NCBI GenBank assembly: GCA_000708835.1
Contig: DF236981.1
Location: forward strand, 248,001 to 312,000
DNA: 64,000 bases
Direction: 5' to 3'
From: Klebsormidium nitens
Taxonomy: Eukaryota > Plantae > Klebsormidiophyceae
The translations under genes were made by a program, and so were the position numbers. Every line of letters starts with the position of its first letter. Position 1 is the stretch's first letter. The notes beneath the pieces were generated by a model. That model saw only the letters and a list, made by a program, of their open reading frames with translations. It was not told where the DNA came from and made no database searches. This document shows, piece after piece, positions 1,096 through 22,600 of the stretch.

Positions 1096-4000
1096 CTAAG
1101 CGTGGGCGATCCCGTTTGCTTTTGCCTTGCTCGGGCCTCCCGGACTCCGCGACTCAATTGCTTTTATGAATGCCGTCGAGTCGGCAATCGCCCCGAAGAC
1201 GCCTCCCTGCATCTTGATCATGTTGTGAGCCGCCAAGTGGTTGGCAGGGTCGGTTGCCCCGGTGCAGTCCGTCAATAAAAGGCACTCGTAGCTGCACAGA
1301 AAGGGTGACTCGGTCGGTGAGGTCAAGCTTCTTACGAGGGCATAAGCAGCGTACTACTTTCCTCAGTGTACGCAAGCGTCCATCAAACGAAAACGAAATA
1401 ACAAAGAAACGAGATTCCATGCGCCGAACGAGCCGCCGGAAAAAGGTTGCCGTGAATTCCGATGGGATGGCACGAGTCTGCCTCGTATCTCTGATTGGAT
1501 GGTAAACCTCCAGGTCAGACGCTCACAGAAAGGGCAGTCCTCGCAAGTCGCTTGCAGCAAAACATCAACGAAACGCACGTGATTGATTGCGGTAGAAAGC
1601 AGGGCCGTCAATGCAGAAGATGTTACAAAAGTCATTCATATAGGAAAAAAGGGTTCATCCGCGAAAATTCACAAAGAAACCCAAATGCTGGCCGATATGT
1701 TTAAAAACCTTGACGCTACTTGACGCAATCTTCTGAGACACGGACCTTATACGCCTGATCTGGCCAAAACGCGTCTTTGGCAACGGACGCTTTGCTGCAG
1801 TCCACCGACTTAAGAGTGAACTTCCACGATCCAAGAAGCCGGTGCCTTCTATGGTTAGTTTCGGTAACGGTTCCTAAGACTGATGTGAACGGATCGAAGC
1901 AAAGTCCACTCACCCCCGGTCGTTGGCGTCGCGCATCGTGGTGTGGACGCAGACGTCGGTAGTGATTCCTGCCAGCACGATGTTCTGGATCTTGGCGAGC
2001 CGCATCAGCATGTCCAGATCGGTCGCGTAGAACGAGCCCTGCGGAGGACGCGCCCCTCGTTACGGTTTTGAACAAACGTGCATAGTCAGTTCCTCTGTTG
2101 GATCTCACAACTAGGCTGTGTTTGTTTGCCGCGCCTATTCAGATTTGCAAAGTGGCTACAATTCAAGATCTGGATCTTTTCAATAGTGTACCAGTCTGTG
2201 CGCTCTGTCGACTCGGCAGATTGTCTCCGCAGCGGCGACGTTGAAATGGCTAGATGGCGGTCCTCCGCTTTGACGTTTTTGATTGATTCATTCCAGAGGG
2301 TTACAGAATGTCGAATCGACTGGACTTGAACCTTCAACTTCACGTTGGTCACAAGGTGTCAGTTCACACCAGAGAGGCGTCATCTGGTATTCAGGACTTC
2401 GGCCAACCGCTTCCCGTCCGTGGCTTTCAGCGTTGCATCGACGCCGACTCAAGAGGCAGATGTCACGTTCTTTCTACAACGGGTAACAAAAGCACGCCAA
2501 CTAGATGAAAGCAGAAGCCACCGCCGACCCTCCTCTCAGAAAACCCCACTCACCTTCCCCGGCTTCTCAATGATTGGCTCTCCTTCCAGGGGGTACAGCT
2601 CCGGGATGATGTCCCAGCCGGGCTCCCCCCTGGTAAGGATTCTGCCGCAAGGCCCCTTGGAACCAATCCCCGCTCCGATCTGCTCCGATCGCCAACGCTT
2701 GTTCTGGGGCAGGTCCGCGAGATCCGGCCGGTGGCCCTCCCGGGTGTGGAACACGTGGTACCCGAGTTTGCGACACGCGTCCAGCACCGATTTGATGGGC
2801 TTGATGGGCGCCTGGAGGGGAGATCCGGGCATTAGCAACACATCAAGCAAGCTGGGGGGTATTCATGCGAGGCCGACGTAACCGAGAAACGCAACCAGGG
2901 TGAGGCGCGCTTCCGGGAGTCGATCTGCGTGATCGAACTGAACCTTGTTTAGTGGATACACACAGACCCTAAGGCAACATGCGCACTTTTCGCCGAACGC
3001 CTGAAGGACAGAGCAGATGACTTGGACCTTGCCAAAGCAATGTACATTGAAAAGTCACACCTTGTTAGTGAGTAGGATCTTCGAGACAGCGTCTGAGGCT
3101 CATTGTCAAAGCGATGCAGCTTAACGGGCTTTCAAGGACAGACCTGGGTAAGCGAGAGATCGTAGCCCATCTGATCGACGTAGCCGCCCTTTCCGCAGAA
3201 GTCGACCTGCATGTCGATGATGATGAACACCTGCAAGGAGCGAGGGGGAACATATCAGCAGATGACACGTCAGATCTTGCTCTCTGCGCTGTCGAGGGCT
3301 GTCACAATCCTCTAAAGGCGGCCACTCGTTCCCTGTGAGTGTAATTAGTCAAACTTACAGGACTTCGAGGGTGCTTCTCAAGAAGGAGAGAACGCAGGGC
3401 TCTGTCTGACCAAGAAAACGAACACCGTTGAGAGCATCCTTAGAACGGTCGTTGCAACCGTTGAGACAACGAAGCTTCTGAGGAGGAGACCGATCTGTCT
3501 TGCACGTCTGATGATTAACTCGACAAGGGTGGAATGCGTAAAGATACCCGAAAATGCCTAAAGAAGACGACCAATCTTGCTCTTTGTGTTTCACCATTGT
3601 GATTGACCCCACTGGATCCGATTCCTATCCTTCTACTTGCGCTTTTTCCGAATACAGGTCAACCTCAGCGATTGAAAGCACAGGCATTGTACGTGAACTC
3701 ATAAGCACGGAGGAGGCTGCCACAAGTCTGAAGAAATCTAAACACGAAGGCCGGCCCTTTTTGCTGAGAGCTTTTCCCTTCAGTTGCGACTTAGGGGTAA
3801 AGACTGACCGTATTATCGGGTCGCAGGTCTCCGTTCCAGGGCCACTTGTAAGGCTCTGCGTCCACTTGGAGAGGGGCCGGCAATGGCTTCCCAACCCCTC
3901 CAGCAGTGTATGCCCGCCATCCGCCATATGAGGTGATGTCTTTCTGGCCCTGCAAGAACACGTGGATGTAACAAACCGCTTTAAGATGCAAAGAGCAAGG

Positions 4001-5475
4001 TTCAGCATGGCATCAAGATACATCATATGGTCCTGGCAAACTTTGCAAGTGCCAGAGCTAAGCAGCATTTGAGAAAGGACTCACTGCACGCACCGGCCTG
4101 CAAATAAACTCATGATTGACACCCCAAGGCACTACCCCTTAACAGGCAACGTCTCTCAGGGGCCGCGCTTGGTCTATGGATTCTTCAGGGGCAGTTGAGC
4201 AAAGCATACCTCCGTCAAGAAAGGCTCTGCAAGAACCCCCAAGATCTCGTCCCCGCCAGCTAGCACCACTTTGCCAATGCTGAGGCCAGCAGGCTCCTTT
4301 GTGAGTATGGACACCAACCCCTCCGCAGGGACGTCCCACACCTGGAATGACTTCATCACTTTAGGGCTGAGCACCGGCGTGCTGGTAGCTGGGCCATTAA
4401 TAGCGCAACCAGAAGCATGCTCTTTCTCCTGCATTAGTTTTGCTGGTGTGTGAGTTAGCAGGACCTTTTATGATCAAGTACTGCAGCATTGAATTACTGC
4501 GGGCTGCCAAAAGGACTATCGAGGAGCTAAGTTGTAGAGCGCTCTGAACAACTGGAGTCAGAAAACATTCTTCATTGCTTGTCCGAGCCCAAACAACCTA
4601 CAGCACAGCAGCCCTTTGCTACACTGGGTACGAAACAGCATGTTTCTTTTTCTCATCGGAAGCGATATCCACAATTTCTGAGGGAGAGACAACAGAAGAG
4701 ACAGCATACCTTACCTCCAAAGCAACTGAAGCTCCAGACTCATCTTTGCCAACTCTAACCATTCCTGGATGCTTGTCATTGATCGAGAAGATGCGGTACT
4801 GGGGAGCAGTGCTGTCTTCCCTGAAGGAGAAATATGCGGACTAACTGTGAGATGTGCCTTATCGATCAAGCATGGCAGTACCTGTGAGAAGATGTATCAA
4901 ACACACAAGCCAGCTGTTCAACCCTGCAATTGCTGCTGACTTGGCAATTGGTAATGTGACAATGATCAAAGTTAAGCTTCAGTCACAAAGCATCTTTGTG
5001 ATGCTGGGAAAGAAACTTTTGAACACTCGCAGGTTAGGCGGGCCGCTGACCTGAATATCCATGTCATTCGTCATGGAGTCATGCAAGAAAACTTGGTTCA
5101 AAGGAACTGTCCTTCACAGCTTGGAGGTGTAATGCATAGTTACCCTGTTACCAGAACTGCTGAGAAAGATAAGAGGGCAAGAGATGTAATAAAGCAGAGA
5201 AAAATAGACTCCAATCTAGGCGGCTGATCCTGAGAAGCTCTGCAGACAGTAGATGGCTGAGGCTCAATCTGTTTCTCTACAAGCTGGCAAATGACCTTTC
5301 TGGCATCAAAAGAGACCATTGCACAATCATCTTTTGTGATATTGGAGTCCCACTGATGAATCAAGGAGGAGAATCTGTGAACTTACCGCACAAATTGTGC
5401 TTTGGCAGCTACCATGTTTGGATTCAATTCTAGCCCCCTCATAAGGGTGCCATTGACAGCCAAGAGAACGCTCAT
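1096..5475 (-). CDS. biuH: Fusion of an N-terminal GGCT-like (allophanate hydrolase C-terminal-like) domain and a biuret hydrolase (isochorismatase-like cysteine hydrolase); 8 exons, 377 aa
   Basis: Exons 5475-5387, 4820-4715, 4341-4210, 3949-3809, 3230-3144, 2811-2554, 2038-1914, 1291-1096. All introns are GT-AG, phases are consistent, total 1134 nt. N-domain: [73 protein letters not shown]-domain: [99 protein letters not shown]. This is colinear with Rhizobium BiuH as I recall it, and the Asp-Lys-Cys triad is intact. An additional upstream exon cannot be excluded. Confidence 0.9.
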
Positions 5476-8417
5476 CTTGCCAGGCTCCTTGCGGTGGAGA
5501 AGTAAGTATTGACCTGGGCAGGGAAAGGAAGTGCTTTCGTGAGTCGTCTGTACTCCTAAATGTAGGGTTGGCGTCATTGTGTGTCACGGGTAGGAGCTTT
5601 TAAGAGATATCTGTTGCGGGGCCAATGAGAGTCACCGATCTTTGCATGCTTCCCTTCCCGCCCTCCAAAGCACACATTCTGCAGAGTCCATAACAGGCAA
5701 TGCAGGCCAGCATTGCTGGCATAGGCTCTGAGTAACACTGTTTTTCATTTGAGTTACATTAAGATTGAGAATTAGCAGTCATTCACCATAATCTAGCAGT
5801 CAATCAGCAGCATCCGACTCCTACCAAGACACGTGAGTTTCATGTTTGACTCCAGCAGTTCAAAAGATCTGGACTTGAAAGCTCTTGAACTAATCAAAGC
5901 CCATCTGACTGGAGACCAAAGGCAGTGTGTGAAGGTGGCTTACTGACTAGTGAGTTAGGCGTGTTGACTTATGAATTTAGTCTCTCGTTCAAGCCTGAAG
6001 TCAGCAAATCCCAAAGAGAAGCATTGACTCTGTCCAGTTCCTGACTTTTGGGGAGGTCAGCAGCATTGAAAACCTTGCAAGGCACCATAAATTCAGCTTG
6101 TGGCAGCTCTCAATGCCCAAACAAATGCTGATGCCTTCAGTTGCTGCTCCATCTTGGCCAGCAGCGTGGCAGATGACCCGAGGAGCATTGCTTGCACATT
6201 ACACCCAGAGCACTAGTACAAGCGAAGGTTTGTCAGAAATGAATACATATCTACGCCTGCATTCTATTCACCAGCTTACCTGGCTCCAAGATTGTTGGTC
6301 ACACTTTATGCCTCACAAAATACGATCTGCAGCATTGAGGCCAAGAATTGTAGTGCTCTGTGAGCTTGACCAGACAAGCCACGCCTGAGCTTTGCCCCTG
6401 TTGCAGTCAGAAGAACAGATCTCTGACTTGGCTTGCAAGCGCAAGAACTCTTTTGGATTCTAATTTCTACTGTCGTTACAACGGAATACTAATAGCTTCT
6501 AGTACAGTGCCTTGCGAGAAAGACCTGTGTAGTGTGCACCATGAGATTGTACCTAAATTCCTGCACCATGCTTCGGCCTTGCAAGTTGCAGCTTCCGCTC
6601 CACAAAGCTGAGTCGATTTTGCCATTGGGCAGGCCTGTGTAAAGCTCCCTTTGAGTAATCATTCCGGGATCCGGTGTCATGATTCCGGCCTTCGAGTAAT
6701 CATTTCAGTTTTTGCAGATAATGTCGCGTCATGATGACGAGTTCAACCACCATGAGGTCCACGTGCACCATGTGGCACATAGGAGTTCTATGGGCTCGAG
6801 TCCATCAGGTTCCGGAGTCCATCAGTGCAGCGAGCGCGAGCGACTTGACTCGGATCGGACGGTTTTTTTGAACGTTGCTTCCAATCTATGCAACTTGCTA
6901 AAGTGCAGCAGTAGCTGAGGGACGTATGCATGCTGCGTGTCCTTTTTGAGTTTTGACTCACTGGCCTCACTGCAGAACAGAGGTGAAGAGGAAATTGTGT
7001 GGCAGCATTCGTAGCCACATACTCATTGGTCACGATATTTTATATGCAGCGGTCGACAAATGAGAAAATGACGCTTCTCAGCTTCCTAGAAATTTCAATT
7101 GACGTCTGGACTGGATACCTCGCCGCACAACACCATGCTGTAGGATGCTTGCAATCCAAATTTTTCAGCACATGGCTCGAACATTTGTGCCGGTCCTTCA
7201 ATCATTCGTTGCAAATCTTCGAGCTTTCGGAAAGGCAAGGAAAAAAGCTGATCTATGTCTCGCTCGCAGCTCCTGATCAGCTTAACCACTGACGTTGAGG
7301 CGGCTGCTTTCTACTGTAGAAGAGTCATTGTAGAGATAGCCTTATTGCAAGATGCACTAAAATTAATCATGCATGCACTTTCTCGCAAGAACATGCCGAC
7401 GGTAGGACCCGGTCAAGATACTGAGATAGTTGATGAGAGTCGGAGGGGTTACAATGTTGGCGCTTGCGCATGTTTCTGCATGAATGTCAGCTTGTCCTTT
7501 TTACCCAATCCGGATCACTATGGTTTGCTGACTATTGTGAGAAAAACGTACATCGATCAATTATCCACCGAGACTCATGCTGCACCTCGGAGTTATTCAT
7601 CCGTTGTATTCTGATACCCGCCAGGTCGGACAGCAACTCAAAGCCGGTGGCTCAATTGACGTGGCTTAGGGTTTCATGCAAAAGATTCATCACAGAAGGA
7701 CCCAACATGTTTAACGTATGCCGATGTCGCATGTGCTGTTTATGCAAAACATCTGAAAGGCCAGTCAGCCTGACTTACACCTTAGTTGACGTTGCCATGG
7801 CCAATGTCCAGCAAAACGGACAAATTCGACGCCACCCTGGAGGGTTGCTTGGCTTAACAATTTGCATCCATATGGAACGCTTCGAAGTACTTGCGAAGCA
7901 ATTCAATTGTTAAATACTGTTAAAGCGGGGAATGTTCGACTTGTCATAGTACCATAGGTAGCAAGCCTGTCTTTGCCTACCATGTTTTCTCTTGAAGCCA
8001 AGGACTGGATGGCTTGCACGTTCTACTTATTATCTACTTACATAAGCTTCGCATACTTCAACCTCCTAACGTTCAATATACAGTCGCGCTCAGACTGACC
8101 TGTGAGTCGACGCCTTAGATAAATACCTCAGAAGTTCTTGCGTGACTTACAGGTTCGTTGTGTAGGAGAGGCTGAAGGAGTAACCACTGCGCGCGACTCG
8201 CTTCGCGCCTTGTCTCCCGATAAGGACAAGCGAAACCAAGCAAGTGACGGCTATTTCACCTGCCTAGCATGCAACACGGGGACTTTCCAAAGAGTTCTGC
8301 ACATCGACCCTTGTACCAGCGCCCCCCCGACCATATTTGTACACCAGATCCCCCTTCTTTTTACTTAACCGAGCTAGTAGTCGAGGCGCATTCCTCTTGG
8401 GTCAATCGTCTCCGGCT

Positions 8418-16655: not shown

Positions 16656-19600
16656 TTAGGAAGTTGTGCCGTTGGCGTGAGTCTCCTTGCTAGCCAGCAG
16701 CGCATCTCGGACTTCTTGGGCAGACGCAGTCCAGCCCACAATCGCCCCCTGACTCGCGAGGATCTCCAGCGTGGAGCTCTTGAACCTGCGGGACGGCGAA
16801 CAACTTTGACTCAGTGAATAAAGAAAAACGGTTTAGGATGGCGGACAGGTCTCAAGGTCCGAAAGGCTGGCCGGCCTTGAAAAGCGTCAATCTGTACCGG
16901 AAAAACCTTAACTTAATGTAAGCTTGTCTCGGCAATCGCACTTTGTCAGCCCCCAATATGAGTCGATCATGTTCACCCAATCTGAATGATCATGCAGAAG
17001 GAGGGAAACTTGAAAAAGTCGTTGAAACCTCACTCAGGAAAGTAGCTCTCCGTTGCGTCTGTCACCATGAGGCACTCGAAGCCCCGGTCGCAGGCCTCGC
17101 GCATCGTGGTCTGGACGCACACCTCGGTTGTCACCCCCCCGAACAGCAGGTGGGTCACGCCCTTGGACCTGCAAAGAGACACGAACGGAGAGTACTGAAT
17201 GCTGAGCCGATTTGTGATTTTCTCCCAACTCGAGTCGGATCGAGCAGTTGATATGGGTTCGGAAGTGTTTAGGGACCAGAAGATACGCGTCGAAGATTGG
17301 CCAATCGAAGAGAACGGCAAGCTTATAGTTGGATACGCCCGCCCGAACTCGCGAGTGCACGACAATTGGATGCTCCGTAACGCGCCTGACCATTCGTACT
17401 GCTGATCGTAGTCTCCGTTGTTGACGCTCTTAACCATGCGCCAGCTTACAAGCCAACAGCTGAACGGCGTGAAGGGTGGACAGCCATGCAATAAAGTGTG
17501 ACGAAAAACGCGGACGCTCCACTCTGAGCGACGACACATGTGAATACCTTTTAGTAAGTTTCAGATTCGACATGGAGGAAGGAAGCCAGATTGAGTGCTC
17601 GAGGCTCGACAAGAGGTGAAGCACAACTTACAGAAGAAACTCGTAGATGTCGGTCTGGTAGAAAGCGCCTTTTCCGGGCTTGTGGATAGCCTACAGGTAA
17701 GGAGACTCCGAGTCAGCCTCCGGGCACGAGCGGCAGATAAAGCATTGAGGCTCGCTGTGGGCGCTTTGGAATGAATGCCGAAGCAAGTTGCAAAGAAACA
17801 GCAGTGATCGCAGATGTGACAGAGAGCTAGCAAGGGACTTAGAGCTTTTATACGAGTCCCACGTGTTTCAACTCCGACGAGGCCGACAGGTTTGAAAGGC
17901 ACGTCACTTCCCTGGATGTCTGCATCTGCCCGGCCCGGTAGAGAATCACGACTGATCTTTTCAATCCTTTGGGTCAGCTGTCCATATGATCGAATCACGA
18001 GCATTTGCTCCCCAGATTCACGGAGTCAAGTACCATGATTGAGACGCAAACTGCGAAGCCATACCTTCTCGTTAGGGGCCGGCGCGTTCTCGTCGACGAT
18101 GCCGTTCCCTTCCTCATTTCGGACGAGGATGCGGCCGCCAATCTCGCCCTGCGTTGCCAAGAGCAGGCACGACTCAGGTCCCGGTTCCAAGCAAGATTTC
18201 GTAACATTCCCTCAAGGCAAATTGAGTGTTGCTGAAAGAAGGAAGCACACGCAGCTGAGTTCCCAGATCCAAAAGCTCTTTTTTTCCTAAACAAGACGAC
18301 AGTGGTCTGAAATCGAGAAGCAGGACTCAACGCAGATCAACCGCCGGAACATCCCCGCGCTGGTTGACAAAGAGAGGTAGCATTGCCGCAGACACGTGCC
18401 GCTCCCAATCACGTCACGCTTACGACCGCTTCCAGACACACCACACCTTCGCGTATGAACCTCCCAATGTAGAGATTGCAACCACTCCATAAGGAGAGAC
18501 AGACGCTTTGTGATTGCGCCAAAAGAGTCTACAAAGAGCGGACGGGTCACCTCATCTCCGATCCGGAGCCCGACCGGCAGCTGCCCTCGGGTGAGCTTGG
18601 CCAGCGGGGCGTCGCTCAGGTCCGGATAATGCGCCTCCAGAGTGTGGACGATGGGCATGCCGAACTCGCGAAACGTATCCTGCAGGCAAAGATATTGAAG
18701 TGAGAGTTGGATCTTGACGCGGAAAGCAACATAGAAAGTCCGAAAAACCTAGTCTGGGAGCGGAGTACTTAGGTCCCGGGTGGTGCGCCTCTAGAGTGTG
18801 GGACGATCGGCATGCCGAACTCGCAAAACGTATCCTGTGAGCAAAGAATTTGTGGATCCTTTACCTCTGAGGCAAGAACCAAACCTAGAGGTCAGCAAAA
18901 GTCTACTCTACCGCAGCTGTATATGCTTGATGGCGGCTTCAGGATCGAGTACCCAATCCGCTGTCAAGCGGACCGCCGAAGAGATTAGGAACAGGAACGA
19001 GAGTGCGTCTGAAGAGGGTTGTGGTGCGCTATTGCGGTCCTGGCAAAGGCAAGACACCCCGTCGCTTGAAAAGACGTCAGACGAGAATGGGAACAGAGCT
19101 GAGACTTGCGCTCTCCTCGCAAGGCCCATCTGAATGTATCGAAGTGCAACATCTGGTTAGCGGTGCATTAGCGAAGCGAACACGACAAGATTCGAGCAGG
19201 AGAAGACTTCAGCCTTCGATTAGGTAAAGCGAAGCGGGTGTTTGATAGTAGCACACCGAAGATCCTTCGGAGGGTCGAGCAACTGACGCACGAGCAGCAA
19301 GGACGATGGAGCCTCAATTCAGGTTAAGAATGGCGGGTACAGATCAACAGCGAACCGGCCCGCATGGAGGGTCCACTCACCAGGAGTCGGCAAGCATACC
19401 TTTAGCGTCAGAAGATGTAGACGAAAGCGGAAGGATGTCCGCAAAAAAGTAACTAGCATGGGCGTCCGCTCACCAGGATCATTCGTACGGTAGGCACGAT
19501 GGCTTGCAGCAGCTTGACGTTGTTGCCCAGCGTAGACCCAAAGCCGCCCTCCTCCACAAAGTCCCTTTGCATGTCGATCATCACCAGCGCGGTCGCCTCA

Positions 19601-22600
19601 ACCTAGAAAGACACACCGATGATGATCAGTGAGCGACTTGTGAATCGGTGCGATTGTCGCTGGCGTTTTCGCCTCCACCTGAAGAGACACACCTATGGTT
19701 AGCAGTCCGCATCTTCGATAGTCGGTGAGAGTAAGACTGTGGCAAAGTCTTCGCTCGAACAAGCCACAAGCATACAGCGCGGTCAGTACCTGGAGGTGAA
19801 GAGACTTACGCAACGTTCAAGGCTGCAGGCTTTCGTGCGACTAGGGCAGGGGCCTTAAGAGCGCAGTTGTCAGTCTGGTCATGTATATTCAATCGAGACG
19901 AGACTAGCAAGAGGTCAGCGTTTCAGCAGGGCAAACAAACATCATAAGCGGACGTCAGACTCTTGGACGAATTTCATCGTGACTCGAAGCTCATTGCGCA
20001 TGTTTCAAGCTCAAAGAAGCGCTTGGTACACAATGACTTGACGCATCCAGCTACGCTGCTCCAGCTATACTTACTGGGAACGTGAACGGCCAAGGCTTGG
20101 CTCCCTCCACGGTCGCTCTCTTCATGTTTTCGTAGTTGGCCGGCAGCGGCACAACGGCCGGAACCAGAGGGTCCGGCTTTCCGATCCAGGGGACCTTCGC
20201 CCACGCCTCGTCGACCGGTTCCGGCGGGCCAGCGGATTCCGGGCTGGAGAGGCCGGAAAGAACGGCATCCAAGCTGGCGACCCAGCCGATGATCCCGCCC
20301 TGGGCCGTGATCTGAGTCAGCGACGCCGCCTTGAAGCTGCAAGAGGAACTCCAGAAGAAGCGGAAGTTAGACGCGGCATCCATCCGTTTCCGCTGAAGTA
20401 GAGTCGTTCCGCCAAAACTGCTGCTTCTGGACGTGAAAGGTGATGTGCAGCTTGAACCTGATGAAAGCGCGAGGGGTTCAACGGAAGCCGGTCCGAAGGG
20501 TCCGCCTTCGGTGAAGAGTAGGAAGCGGGCAGTTGCAGCAGGAACAAAACAAAAGGTGCATGAAGCAGCTCTGTCTTGGTCTTTGTACATTTGAGATCCC
20601 TGCTGAATCGAGATGCCTTGAGTTGCCAGCTTTTATAGGCAAGAAACCAGGTGACAAGACGACAGACAGTATCACAAGCCGACCAGGAAGAGGATGTCGC
20701 ATGCATAGTCGAGGTTTCGAAGCTACTAGCGCCCCAAATCGCACCGCAGACCTCAGCAGCCTGTTCATCTAGTTCGTTCACTTTTTCAGACTCAGCAAAG
20801 TCGTTCGGTAAGAGCTGTATAAAATAATGGAGAACGCTGCTGCTTACTCGGGGTTGTAGCTAGCGGTGCACTCGTCAACTAGGAGCGGGTCGAAGCCGCG
20901 GTCGTTGAGCTCGCGCATGACGATCTGGACCGTGATGTCGGTCTCCAGTCCGGCGACCAGCACATAGCGGATTTCCTCCTTGACCAGGAATTCGTGAACG
21001 TCTGTGGCGTGGCCGATGCCCTTGCCGGGAGTGTAGACAATCTGCCATAGGAGATGGGAAACTTAAGGGGGGGAAGGAGAAATACGTATGGATGTTGGGT
21101 TGGATGAGAAGAAAGACCTGTGGCTGTCAGATATGGCTGATGCCATTGCCGAAAGTGAAAAGACACCTCTGAAAAGACATGGAAAGAATGGGAGGAGAAG
21201 AAAGACAGTTCTGGATTTCTGCTTTGCAAGCGGAGTGCTATTTGAAGAAGAATGATTGGCAAGGTGGATAAGTGAAGACAAAATGGGAGAGACTGACAAC
21301 CAACCATGGTCGGTCTCCGATTTGAGGACAGCAGCCTTCCGTGATGCGATGAACTGATAGAATCTAGACTTACTCACTCACACAAGGCCTCAGCAGATTG
21401 TGTGTCCAAGTTTGAGAAGACGGATGAAATGAAGGGAATCCAGTCACATAAAAGAGGGATGGTGGGAAGCAAGAAGCAAACAAGTCGTTCAAAGGATAGA
21501 CACACGAACGTTAGAAGAGTGGGGTCAGTAACAGGGTAATCGTGCAAGCCTTAAACACGTTGGGTTTTGAAAATCTGGAAATGGAAGCCAGGTTTTAACT
21601 CCCATGGTGCCTTTAGGACCAGCAGGGCAGTCTAAGAGAGCCTTCAAAGCTCTCCCCCAACTAAACCAGAAAAATGGTCCTTGCCAGAAAACCTCCGCGC
21701 ACAGAGTAACATTTGACAAGGGGACCTACCTTCTCTCCATCTAGGGGGGCCGCATCATCGACGAACTGCGTGCCAATCTCCCCCTGAATCAGGATGCGCC
21801 CCCCTTGGGAGCCCTGCACAGAAGAGGCTGGTTTTAAAGAAAGATCCACCAACAAGCATTCGCTCAACCAGCAAGAAGAACGCTTACCAGTAGCTTCAAA
21901 GTTGATGGCACATTCTTTTCAGAAGCTCACACTGCTAGCAATTGCGGAGGCAGATCTGTACCACCCCTGAGCCCTCACTTAAGTAGGTGCGTTGTTTGCG
22001 TGACTGCAGAAGGATCATGGCAGCAGATGACTGTGCTCTCACCTCATCCCCAATGCCGACTCCGCCAGTCTGCTTCTTGGTCTTGCTGGCCTTGGAAGGG
22101 GCCAGGTCACTCAGGTCTGGCTTGTATGCTTCTGCCACATGGACCACGGTCAGCTTTGCCTCTCTGGCTGCTTCCTGCAGAAGATTCTGTGCAAATGGTT
22201 CTGACATTGATGCTGAGTGGTTTGGAGCTCTTGATTGCAATTGACCAGTCCCATTTGGCCGTCAAGAAGAGGGAAGTGGCTTGAGTTGATCATAAGAGAT
22301 GGCTTCTTTTGTGGTCAAATAGAAGCCACTATCAACAAAGATAATGCAGCTGAACGGAACACAGGAGACTATTTGGCAGGTAAGATATAGCATAACAAAT
22401 TATGAGCCAGGTTTCATGGCACACTCACCAGGAGTTTGGCGACTTCTGGCCTGATAGATTGCACTTTTGAAAGGTCGTTCCCAAGTAGTTCCGCATAGCC
22501 CCCGGGCTCCAAGAAGTCGTGCTGCAGCTTCAGCAGCAGAAGGGCAGTTTTGCCAACCTGCATTTGATCCCCCAGATCAGCTTGGAAGTCATTCTTAAGA

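What the first reader, a model, noticed from the sequence alone, without database searches (positions are those of the whole stretch)
1096..5475. GGCT-like domain fused to biuret hydrolase: a possible decarboxylase channelling substrate into BiuH
Seen: about 130 N-terminal residues ([40 protein letters not shown]) are spliced in frame to BiuH; exon 3949-3809 encodes the end of one domain and the start of the other. Known: this domain resembles the C-terminal GGCT-fold domain of allophanate hydrolase, which was proposed to decarboxylate an N-carboxy intermediate. That domain usually has V.GAH(L/M)SG, whereas this one has VNGTLMRG, without the His. Inference: it may decarboxylate carboxybiuret (the TrtA product) to feed the fused BiuH, or act on the allophanate product.
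Basis: partly seen in the sequence, partly recalled or inferred. Interest (0 to 1): 0.75.

Follow-up and report, generated by a model that had tools for sequence, protein, structure and literature searches.

The report
Biuret hydrolase fused to AH_C domain
A green-alga (Klebsormidium) gene really does join a biuret-splitting enzyme to a small domain of unproven function; the same small protein is fused to or sits beside biuret/triuret enzymes in other algae and many bacteria, so it is probably a missing step in how microbes recover nitrogen from these urea-fertiliser by-products.

Summary
An eight-exon, minus-strand gene (5475..1096, 377 codons, all introns GT-AG) encodes a complete AH_C domain fused to a biuret hydrolase. 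Exon 3949-3809 spans the junction in one open frame.

The C-terminal half is a true BiuH. The database's K. nitens protein scores 403.9 bits against a 370-bit NCBIfam cutoff, and 17 of 17 catalytic and biuret-binding residues are kept.

The N-terminal half belongs to the stand-alone "c4763" subfamily (PDB 5C5Z). It has VNGTLMRG where allophanate hydrolase has VVGAHL(S/K)G, so the proposed His is a Leu. It keeps 30 of 31 subfamily-invariant residues.

The fusion is not unique:
- Same order in other streptophyte algae and in a bacterial operon.
- AH_C–BiuH–TrtA triple fusions (Chlorokybus).
- Reverse order in Chromera.
- Fused to carbamate kinase in 22 of 80 bacterial loci.

In 16 bacterial trtA/biuH clusters the stand-alone AH_C gene and AtzF never co-occur (6 versus 10). 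TrtB, the known carboxybiuret decarboxylase, belongs to a different family.

My best reading is a decarboxylase for N-carboxylated ureides, allophanate more likely than carboxybiuret. The scan also noted this stretch as part of a cluster note on the same window, not on other DNA.

The parts
5387..5475 (-). Exon 1: start codon at 5475-5473; first strand of the AH_C domain, carrying the VNGTLMRG motif
   Evidence: translation, GT donor. (AH_C profile 2-27). (31 bits to 5c5z, which has the same motif). Natural homologues start at the same place (P0013).
4715..4820 (-). Exon 2: AH_C domain, profile positions 30-63
   Evidence: P0103 aligns at 100% identity here.
4210..4341 (-). Exon 3: AH_C domain core, profile positions 64-106, including the invariant EP.GL.IGK segment
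   Evidence: 31.1 bits, above the 27-bit cutoff on its own. (41 bits to 5c5z). (invariant columns kept).
3809..3949 (-). Exon 4, the junction exon: end of AH_C (GGWRAY), a linker of about 12 residues, and the start of BiuH ([10 protein letters not shown]...)
   Evidence: AH_C 109-123 at residues 2-16. (BiuH model 1-19 at residues 29-47). It is one open frame (ORF 3791..3991).
3144..3230 (-). Exon 5: BiuH, with catalytic Asp36 and Gln38, Phe41, Tyr47, Met51
   Evidence: 47.6 bits to BiuH. (alignment to 6azo chain 52-79; the tag offset is +20 according to PMC5806882).
2554..2811 (-). Exon 6: BiuH core, ending in K-P-G-K, which covers Lys142 and Lys145
   Evidence: 156 bits and about 86% identity to Rhizobium BiuH 6azo; TrtA 6xix only 79.5 bits. 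(149.9 bits).
1914..2038 (-). Exon 7: BiuH, with the nucleophile Cys175 plus Phe148, Thr151, Gly169, Ile170, Thr171, Val174, Thr179
   Evidence: ungapped match to 6azo chain 166-206. (66 bits).
1096..1291 (-). Exon 8: BiuH C-terminus with Gln215 and Val218, a tail of about 20 residues, and the stop codon at 1098-1096
   Evidence: 6azn chain 208-259. (56.8 bits). P0103 aligns at 100% identity.
5476..5577 (-). Possible 5' extension: an in-frame ATG at 5577 would add 34 residues if it is transcribed. No homologue supports it.
   Evidence: ORF 5383..5577. Homologues start just before the motif.
17051..22201 (-). Neighbouring TrtA-like isochorismatase exons (the pathway partner; not part of this gene)
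Evidence: tblastn hits at 17051-19593 and 20859-22201.

Best explanation
This is one nuclear gene of Klebsormidium nitens. It encodes a two-domain enzyme of the triuret/biuret nitrogen-salvage pathway.

Shown: residues of about 140-360 are a bona fide biuret hydrolase (an Asp-Lys-Cys cysteine hydrolase) that converts biuret to allophanate plus NH3. Residues of about 4-125 are a complete domain of the c4763 subfamily of the allophanate-hydrolase C-terminal (AH_C, GGCT-like) fold. This subfamily has its own invariant Asn, Thr, Arg and Glu where canonical AH has its proposed catalytic His.

Inferred: the domain is a catalytic partner, not a passive appendage. It removes the N-carboxyl (carbamate-type) group from pathway intermediates. 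The most likely substrate is BiuH's own product (allophanate to urea plus CO2, with urease finishing the job), so the domain would stand in for the missing allophanate hydrolase AtzF. It may also act on the TrtA product carboxybiuret.

Fusion to BiuH would keep the two activities in 1:1 stoichiometry and close together. Real substrate channelling is not shown.
For: Gene and fusion:
- Canonical splice sites, collinear domain hits, and a junction exon in one open frame.
- The public protein P0103 has both domains.
- Complete transcript-derived ORFs in other eukaryotes carry the same fusion (P0013, P0106).

BiuH identity:
- P0103 scores 403.9 bits against a 370-bit cutoff on the BiuH equivalog, while TrtA-like and other IHLs score 250-282 and fail.
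- 17 of 17 catalytic and binding residues are kept.

Domain identity:
- About 55-77% identity per exon to 5C5Z.
- 30 of 31 invariant columns kept.
- The model of homologue P0013 superposes on 5c5z with TM 0.90 and 1.9 A rmsd.

Link to the pathway:
- AH_C–BiuH also occurs in a bacterial operon (P0108).
- AH_C–BiuH–TrtA triple fusions exist.
- An IHL–AH_C fusion in the reverse order exists in Chromera.
- 35 of 80 bacterial loci have an IHL hydrolase within 10 kb.
- In Nitrospira, trtA overlaps the AH_C-like gene.

Evidence for the product side:
- Among 16 trtA/biuH clusters, all 10 with AtzF lack a stand-alone AH_C gene, and all 6 with it lack AtzF. Every cluster therefore has exactly one AH_C-type domain.
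- The domain co-occurs with Cupin_7, which occupies TrtB's slot.
- It is fused to carbamate kinase, whose product is carbamate, in 22 of 80 loci.
- The window has no AtzF or TrtB homologue.
- Chlorophyte BiuH–TrtA fusions lack AH_C. That lineage has the AH amidase and no urease, whereas land plants have urease only (PMC3073912).
Against: - No biochemical data exist for any c4763-type protein.
- For AtzF, removing the C-terminal domain left activity unchanged and altered only the oligomeric state (PMC3944691).
- In operons with AllF/AllG and carbamate kinase, decarboxylating allophanate to urea would bypass those enzymes. There, carbamate or carboxybiuret fits better.
- The AtzF complementarity rests on about three independent lineages on the AH_C side and only Pseudomonadota on the AtzF side. 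The two sets were also sampled differently.
- 44 of 80 loci show no conserved enzyme neighbour.
- I could not check whether K. nitens lacks allophanate hydrolase or has urease. That Klebsormidium is a urease-type alga is from memory only (Al-Houty & Syrett 1984, seen here only as a cited title).
- The AF2 model gives no defined interface between the domains.
Confidence: 0.45

Rival explanations
1. The domain is a carboxybiuret decarboxylase, a non-homologous analogue of TrtB. It converts the TrtA product to biuret and hands it to the fused BiuH.
For: - In Nitrospira L076 and L048 the AH_C-like gene overlaps the stop of trtA. This is the slot held by HpxZ/TrtB in Pseudomonas, Ideonella and Cupriavidus clusters.
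- None of the 6 AH_C-bearing trtA clusters has a TrtB homologue, against 6 of 10 of the others.
- A 2025 paper states that comammox clusters lack trtB and that the step is 'unidentified or spontaneous' (PMC12625717).
- A TrtA-like gene lies 12-17 kb away in the window.
- In the AH_C–BiuH order, the domain comes before BiuH.
Against: - The domain co-occurs with Cupin_7, and is even fused to it. Cupin_7 alternates with TrtB in the same slot.
- It is strictly complementary to AtzF, which this reading does not predict.
- It occurs in operons with one hydrolase and is fused to carbamate kinase.
- In the triple fusions it lies next to BiuH, not TrtA, and in Chromera it follows the hydrolase.
- Carboxybiuret already decays spontaneously with a half-life of about 20 min (PMC7948467), so the need for a catalyst is weaker than for allophanate.
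Confidence: 0.2
2. The domain is non-catalytic. It is an oligomerisation or scaffold module that sets the quaternary structure of BiuH, or docks it to partner enzymes such as the TrtA-like protein.
For: [quoted passage not shown]
- The proposed catalytic His of AH is absent here.
- BiuH borrows Gln215 from a neighbouring subunit, so its assembly matters for activity (PMC5806882).
Against: - The domain exists as a free-standing gene of about 130 aa in at least 573 matched stretches of species-representative genomes.
- It has 32 invariant columns, many of them polar (Asn, Thr, Arg, Tyr-Arg, Ser, Asp, three Glu).
- It is fused to several unrelated partners (BiuH, carbamate kinase, Cupin_7), and to an IHL hydrolase in both orders.
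- Most bacterial BiuHs work without it.
Confidence: 0.15
3. The domain does the same job as the canonical AH C-domain. It acts on N-carboxycarbamate or carbamate after an unlinked amidase or a phosphorolytic enzyme has cleaved allophanate. It does not touch allophanate or carboxybiuret itself.
For: - It is homologous to the AH C-domain (64-71 bits). The N and C domains of AH are described as catalysing sequential reactions (PMC5770610).
- Carbamate kinase–AH_C fusions place it next to a carbamate-producing enzyme.
- In L034 an AH_C-like gene is followed by a separate amidase.
Against: - No amidase is found in the window or in 78 of 80 bacterial loci.
- The active-site motif differs from canonical AH.
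- Carbamate breaks down quickly on its own (general chemistry, not tested here).
- Fusion to BiuH, rather than to the enzyme that would make the substrate, is left unexplained.
Confidence: 0.12
4. A gene-model artefact: two adjacent genes wrongly read as one.
For: The 5' end is uncertain.
Against: - Exon 4 encodes both the end of AH_C and the start of BiuH in one open frame.
- The fusion recurs in independent gene models and in transcriptome ORFs of other eukaryotes, and in a bacterial ORF.
Confidence: 0.02

Closest known systems
Biuret hydrolase BiuH of Rhizobium leguminosarum bv. viciae 3841 (PDB 6AZO, 6AZQ, 5BK6; NCBIfam NF050097)
   Same: The C-terminal half is about 86% identical in exon 6. 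It passes the equivalog cutoff and keeps the Asp36/Lys142/Cys175 triad and all biuret-contacting residues.
   Different: Bacterial BiuHs are single-domain proteins of about 225-230 aa. This one carries a 125-residue AH_C-type domain at its N-terminus and is encoded by an intron-containing eukaryotic gene.
c4763 of uropathogenic E. coli (PDB 5C5Z), a stand-alone protein of unknown function, often mis-annotated as 'glutamyl-tRNA amidotransferase'
   Same: Same subfamily. It has the same [15 protein letters not shown] start, is about 55-77% identical per exon, and gives a TM-score of 0.90 to the model of the algal homologue.
   Different: c4763-type proteins are free-standing. In the E. coli plasmid and Photobacterium relatives examined here, the gene lies in an operon with an IHL hydrolase, AllH/AllF/AllG-like proteins, carbamate kinase and a permease. 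Here the domain is covalently joined to BiuH.
C-terminal domain of allophanate hydrolase (K. lactis AH 4ISS, Granulibacter AH 4GYR, AtzF); Pfam AH_C PF21986
   Same: Homologous fold: 64-71 bits profile to sequence, and 2.2 A rmsd over 131 columns. It is likewise attached to an enzyme of allophanate metabolism.
   Different: Canonical domains follow an amidase-signature domain and read VVGAHL(S/K)G and vP.pL.IG. This one precedes a cysteine hydrolase and reads VNGTLMRG and EP.GL.IG, so the His is replaced by Leu.
TrtB, the experimentally shown carboxybiuret decarboxylase (Aukema et al. 2020, as cited in PMC7948467); AtzH/HpxZ family
   Same: It may perform the same or a neighbouring decarboxylation, and it occupies the same gene slot after trtA.
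   Different: Different family. TrtB is placed in one tree with AtzH and HpxZ (PMC12625717 Fig. S11). An HpxZ/TrtB-like seed finds nothing in the window and matches only 1 of 80 AH_C loci.

Membership tests
BiuH (biuret amidohydrolase, NCBIfam NF050097 equivalog; isochorismatase-like hydrolases) | Whole-protein score at or above the curated equivalog cutoff of 370 bits | tested here: met
   P0103, the database's K. nitens protein for this gene, scores 403.9 bits. TrtA-like (250), E. coli-operon IHL (280) and Chromera (282) fail. The exons match model positions 1-221 one after another.
BiuH (biuret amidohydrolase, NCBIfam NF050097 equivalog; isochorismatase-like hydrolases) | Catalytic triad Asp36 / Lys142 / Cys175 | tested here: met
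   All three are present: Asp in E5, Lys in E6, Cys in E7. Alignments to 6azo with a tag offset of +20.
BiuH (biuret amidohydrolase, NCBIfam NF050097 equivalog; isochorismatase-like hydrolases) | Biuret-binding and gating residues: Lys145, Ile170, Thr171, Val174, Gln215, Val218, Phe41, Tyr47, Met51 | tested here: met
   All are identical in the exon alignments. The residue list comes from PMC5806882.
BiuH (biuret amidohydrolase, NCBIfam NF050097 equivalog; isochorismatase-like hydrolases) | Closer to BiuH than to the paralogue TrtA | tested here: met
   E6 gives 156 bits to BiuH 6azo and 79.5 bits to TrtA 6xix. P0103 is 78% identical to bacterial BiuH and 44% to a TrtA-like protein.
BiuH (biuret amidohydrolase, NCBIfam NF050097 equivalog; isochorismatase-like hydrolases) | Biuret-specific hydrolase activity | not testable with these tools
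   Needs an enzyme assay.
AH_C (Pfam PF21986, allophanate hydrolase C-terminal domain) | Pfam score above the gathering threshold over the whole domain | tested here: met
   P0103 scores 107 bits against a 27-bit cutoff, covering profile positions 20-122 because that model is truncated. Exons E1-E4 cover profile positions 2-123 one after another, and E3 alone scores 31.1 bits.
AH_C (Pfam PF21986, allophanate hydrolase C-terminal domain) | Position directly after an amidase-signature domain, as in allophanate hydrolase | tested here: not met
   The gene has no amidase domain. There is no AtzF-amidase match anywhere in the 64-kb window.
   The profile alignment places Leu of VNGTLMRG opposite His of VVGAHLSG / VVGAHLKG in 4gyr, 4iss and 5i8i.
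c4763-type subfamily (PDB 5C5Z) | The subfamily's invariant residues, including the VNGTLMRG and EP.GL.IG motifs | tested here: met
   30 of 31 testable invariant columns of alignment A1 are identical in exons E1-E3. The only change is Trp42 to Phe.
c4763-type subfamily (PDB 5C5Z) | Free-standing protein of about 130 aa | tested here: not met
   Here it is the N-terminal domain of a 377-residue protein.
GGCT-like / GGACT fold (Pfam PF06094) | Significant match to the GGACT model | tested here: inconclusive
   Complete homologues pass the 22.8-bit cutoff: P0013 29.8, P0093 30.6, P0097 26.2. The N-truncated P0103 and the single exons give no hit. Foldseek's listed hits show 5c5z and AH but no GGCT or GGACT entry.
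TrtB / AtzH / HpxZ family (known carboxybiuret decarboxylase) | Sequence homology to HpxZ/TrtB-like proteins | tested here: not met
   tblastn with two HpxZ/TrtB-like seeds (L085, L088) finds nothing in the window. The domain is AH_C, a different family.

The most novel reading that the evidence does not exclude
c4763-type AH_C proteins are an unrecognised enzyme family: decarboxylases of N-carboxylated ureides (allophanate and/or carboxybiuret). They would define an amidase-free, urea-producing (or carbamate-kinase-coupled) ending of the triuret/biuret pathway. That route would be used by streptophyte algae, cyanobacteria, comammox Nitrospira, mycobacteria and plasmid-bearing enterobacteria. 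It would also give a function to the 'UPEC-specific' protein c4763, and bear on the disputed role of the allophanate hydrolase C-domain.
Probability: 0.35. Interest if true: 0.75.

Novelty: new variant of a known kind. Interest (0 to 1): 0.6.

Why it matters
Biuret and triuret are impurities of urea fertiliser, which is applied in very large amounts, and biuret is toxic to crops. BiuH, TrtA, TrtB and AtzF are the only enzymes assigned to their breakdown.

The fusions and gene neighbourhoods found here point to a further, widespread component. In many organisms it appears instead of allophanate hydrolase and TrtB. A 2025 study of nitrifiers explicitly left that step as "unidentified or spontaneous".

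If the domain is catalytic, three things follow:
- It fills a gap in a nitrogen-cycle pathway.
- It gives a function to a solved structure of unknown role (5C5Z).
- It bears on the unresolved question of whether the allophanate hydrolase C-domain is an enzyme or a scaffold.

The algal fusion protein is a convenient single-polypeptide system for testing this.

Tried and rejected
All searches of this gene were done exon by exon by reference. Full-length tests used the database's own K. nitens protein P0103 and natural homologues.
2. Single exons against the PDB find 5c5z but not canonical AH. A profile of stand-alone relatives was needed.
3. A maximum-likelihood tree of 102 AH_C-like domains (134 columns, quick search only) is largely unresolved. 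It gives no donor lineage for the algal domain and is not used as evidence.
4. My first greedy ORF calling failed in high-GC loci, so I replaced it with clustering of all ORFs.
5. Neighbours in the 44 loci without an IHL hydrolase show no recurrent enzyme partner, only ABC transporters. The idea that every partner makes a carbamate therefore cannot be generalised.
6. The literature search for 'c4763' returned nothing relevant. Aukema 2020, Fan 2013 and Lin & St Maurice 2013 are not held, so TrtB's family was inferred from a supplement legend plus the HpxZ annotation, and the AH C-domain mechanism is cited second-hand.
7. The AF2 monomer of P0013 has two confident domains but pTM 0.58 and a disordered linker, so it says nothing about a channel.
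8. A gene-merger artefact and bacterial contamination were both considered and rejected, because of the junction exon, the seven spliceosomal introns and the recurrence of the fusion.


Full report
**What is there.** On the minus strand between 5475 and 1096 lies an eight-exon gene. Every intron starts with GT and ends with AG, and the exons add up to 1134 nt, which is 377 codons plus a stop. Each was searched by reference, and full-length tests used natural database proteins.

The four 5' exons hit Pfam AH_C (PF21986) at profile positions 2-27, 30-63, 64-106 and 109-123 of 123. The four 3' exons hit Isochorismatase one after another along the profile. On NCBIfam, exon 4 (residues 29-47) through exon 8 cover positions 1-221 of the biuret amidohydrolase equivalog NF050097.

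Exon 4 (3949-3809) is one open frame holding the last AH_C strand, a short linker and the first BiuH residues. The fusion therefore does not depend on any splice prediction.

The public K. nitens protein P0103 ('Isochorismatase family protein', 357 aa) uses the same exons but starts at an internal Met. It lacks the first 20 residues, including the conserved motif. Homologues support the start at 5475. An in-frame ATG at 5577 cannot be excluded.

**The hydrolase half.** Exon 6 is about 86% identical to Rhizobium BiuH (156 bits), against 79.5 bits for TrtA. P0103 scores 403.9 bits on the BiuH equivalog (cutoff 370), while TrtA-like and other IHL proteins score 250-282.

I used the residue list of Esquirol et al. 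(PMC5806882) and allowed for the 20-residue tag. Asp36, Gln38, Phe41, Tyr47, Met51, Lys142, Lys145, Phe148, Thr151, Gly169, Ile170, Thr171, Val174, Cys175, Thr179, Gln215 and Val218 are all conserved. This half is a biuret hydrolase with high confidence. That green algae have biuret hydrolases is already known (Robinson et al. 2018, as cited).

**The N-terminal half.** Its closest solved relative is not allophanate hydrolase. It is 5C5Z, the free-standing 137-residue protein c4763 of uropathogenic E. coli, and c4763 begins with the same [15 protein letters not shown].

A profile of eight stand-alone relatives (A1) matches 5c5z at 186 bits and the AH structures 4GYR, 4ISS and 5I8I at 64-71 bits. 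The alignment puts VNGTLMRG opposite VVGAHLSG/VVGAHLKG, and EP.GL.IG opposite vP.pL.IG.

The subfamily has its own invariant polar set (Asn, Thr, Arg, Tyr-Arg, Ser, Asp, three Glu). The exons keep 30 of 31 testable invariant columns.

An AF2 model of the complete natural homologue P0013 has two confident domains, a disordered linker and pTM 0.58. Its N-domain superposes on 5c5z (TM 0.90, 1.9 A) and on the AH C-domain (2.2 A).

**Distribution of the fusion.** A HMMER search of 1.84 billion representatives with exon 3 gave only 71 hits. Most were stand-alone proteins of about 130 aa or fragments. The multi-domain hits, together with a word search using P0013, show the following architectures:
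- AH_C–BiuH in K. nitens, in three SM000… gene models (Spirogloea-type identifiers), in transcriptome ORFs and in Logan assemblies.
- AH_C–BiuH in P0108, which lies among overlapping genes followed by an ABC ATPase. This is a bacterial operon.
- AH_C–BiuH–TrtA triple fusions in Chlorokybus (Chlat1 models) and in P0092.
- A BiuH-like domain followed by AH_C in Chromera velia.
- Carbamate kinase–AH_C fusions.
- Cupin_7–AH_C fusions.
- Chlorophyte proteins (Chromochloris, Micractinium) that are BiuH–TrtA with no AH_C.

**Bacterial context.** The genome-contig scan found relatives in at least 573 matched stretches of species-representative genomes. Among the 80 loci fetched:
- 35 have an isochorismatase-like hydrolase within 10 kb.
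- 27 also have AllF, AllG and carbamate kinase.
- In 22 the AH_C domain is the C-terminus of carbamate kinase, often followed by a urea-transporter-family or NCS1 permease.
- The other 44 show no recurrent enzyme partner.

In Nitrospira L076 and L048 the order is allF-allG-CK-bmp-permeases-biuH-ABC ATPase-trtA-AH_C-like. The trtA assignment is clear (312 bits to TrtA 6XIX against roughly 192-213 bits to the BiuH structures), and the AH_C-like gene overlaps its stop codon. This matches the comammox cluster that a 2025 paper describes as lacking trtB (PMC12625717).

**Which step?** The known carboxybiuret decarboxylase TrtB (PMC7948467) is placed in one tree with AtzH and HpxZ, so it belongs to another family.

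I took ten trtA clusters sampled independently from plasmids and the six trtA clusters from the AH_C-sampled set. I scored each for AtzF, TrtB/HpxZ, Cupin_7 and a stand-alone AH_C gene.
- All ten plasmid clusters have AtzF, with its built-in AH_C domain, and no stand-alone AH_C gene.
- All six AH_C clusters lack both AtzF and TrtB.
- By my own arithmetic the exact probability of that split is 1/8008. The two sets differ in sampling and taxonomy, though, and represent only a few independent lineages.

TrtB (6 of 10) and Cupin_7 (3 of 10) alternate in the slot right after trtA and never co-occur. Cupin_7 does co-occur with the stand-alone AH_C gene (L040, L044) and is even fused to it (P0031). 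Across all 80 AH_C loci, only two have any AtzF-like amidase and only one has an HpxZ-like gene. The window has neither.

The simplest reading is that the AH_C-type domain is the constant element of these clusters, and that the free or BiuH-fused form appears where the AtzF amidase is absent. That favours a role on the allophanate/carbamate side. The trtA adjacency and the absence of TrtB keep the carboxybiuret reading alive. The carbamate-kinase fusions fit a generic specificity for N-carboxyl (carbamate-type) groups.

An eukaryotic parallel is suggestive but unverified. Core chlorophytes, which have the AH amidase and no urease (PMC3073912 Table 1), have BiuH–TrtA without AH_C. Streptophyte algae carry AH_C–BiuH. 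That Klebsormidium is a urease-type alga is my recollection of Al-Houty & Syrett 1984, seen here only as a cited title.

**Caveats.** No c4763-type protein has been assayed. For AtzF, deleting the C-terminal fragment did not lower activity and changed only the oligomeric state (PMC3944691), so a structural role is a real rival. The review of urea amidolyase, by contrast, describes the N and C domains as catalysing sequential reactions (PMC5770610). The domain tree is unresolved. Nothing here shows channelling.

**Verdict.**
- The BiuH assignment is secure.
- The N-domain is a c4763-type AH_C domain firmly tied to triuret/biuret metabolism by recurrent fusions and operon context.
- Its reaction is unproven.
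- The architecture is already in public annotation, but I found no discussion of it in the literature I could search.
- I file it as a new variant of a known kind, with a clear and inexpensive experimental test.

Noticed in passing
window 5415-5475 (and 5577): The public K. nitens protein P0103 starts at an internal Met and omits the first 20 residues, including the invariant VNGTLMRG motif. Pfam AH_C therefore matches it only from profile position 20. An in-frame upstream ATG at 5577 would add 34 residues.
   Followed up: partly
L084:9659-10006, L090:10659-10991, L092:10659-11012, L040:6920-7348, L044:9127-9941; P0031: A Cupin_7 gene sits right after trtA, where HpxZ/TrtB sits in other clusters. 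The two never occur together in 10 clusters. Cupin_7 is also adjacent to, or fused with, the c4763-type gene. It is a candidate non-homologous carboxybiuret decarboxylase.
   Followed up: partly
L003:2234-9447, L001:2265-9537, L056:9017-10387, L015, L038, L065, L082: A conserved operon: IHL hydrolase (a third clade between TrtA and BiuH), AllH, AllF, AllG, carbamate kinase (fused to AH_C in 22 of 80 loci), then a urea-transporter-family or NCS1 permease. It is found in E. coli plasmids, Photobacterium, Serratia, mycobacteria and Burkholderiales. It looks like a single ATP-yielding ureide pathway rather than two pathways placed side by side.
   Followed up: partly
P0101, P0104 (Chlat1 models), P0092; P0102, P0107, P0110: Chlorokybus-type proteins fuse AH_C, BiuH and a TrtA-like domain in one chain. 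Chlorophyte and Chrysophaeum proteins fuse BiuH and a TrtA-like domain without AH_C.
   Followed up: partly
P0022 (Chromera velia Cvel_13520): A reverse-order fusion: a BiuH-like hydrolase (282 bits, below the BiuH cutoff) followed by a c4763-type AH_C domain.
   Followed up: partly
L084:5785-6795, L088:5611-6618, L091:6763-7767, L093:6768-7775, L063:5018-6049, L052: A formamidase-like carbon-nitrogen hydrolase is conserved just upstream of biuH in many trtA/biuH clusters, both with and without AtzF. Its role in the pathway is unassigned.
   Followed up: no
L034:10007-11904; L072:9887-10674: Two Rokubacteria loci: in one the AH_C-like gene is followed by a separate amidase (34% identical to the AtzF amidase part), which looks like a split AtzF. 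In the other it is followed by an HpxZ/TrtB-like gene.
   Followed up: no
window 17051-19593 and 20859-22201 (minus strand): Further isochorismatase-like exons, closer to TrtA than to BiuH, lie 12-17 kb from this gene, with an AZG-type permease between them according to earlier notes. Together they make a eukaryotic cluster of pathway genes.
   Followed up: partly
P0055 (Spirulina subsalsa, 271 aa): A c4763-type domain followed by a C-terminal extension of about 140 residues with no Pfam match.
   Followed up: no
P0013 model, residues 9-14: In the AF2 model the invariant G-T-L-M-R-G loop is the least confident part of the N-domain (pLDDT below 50). This would fit a mobile substrate-binding loop, or it may just be a modelling weakness.
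   Followed up: no
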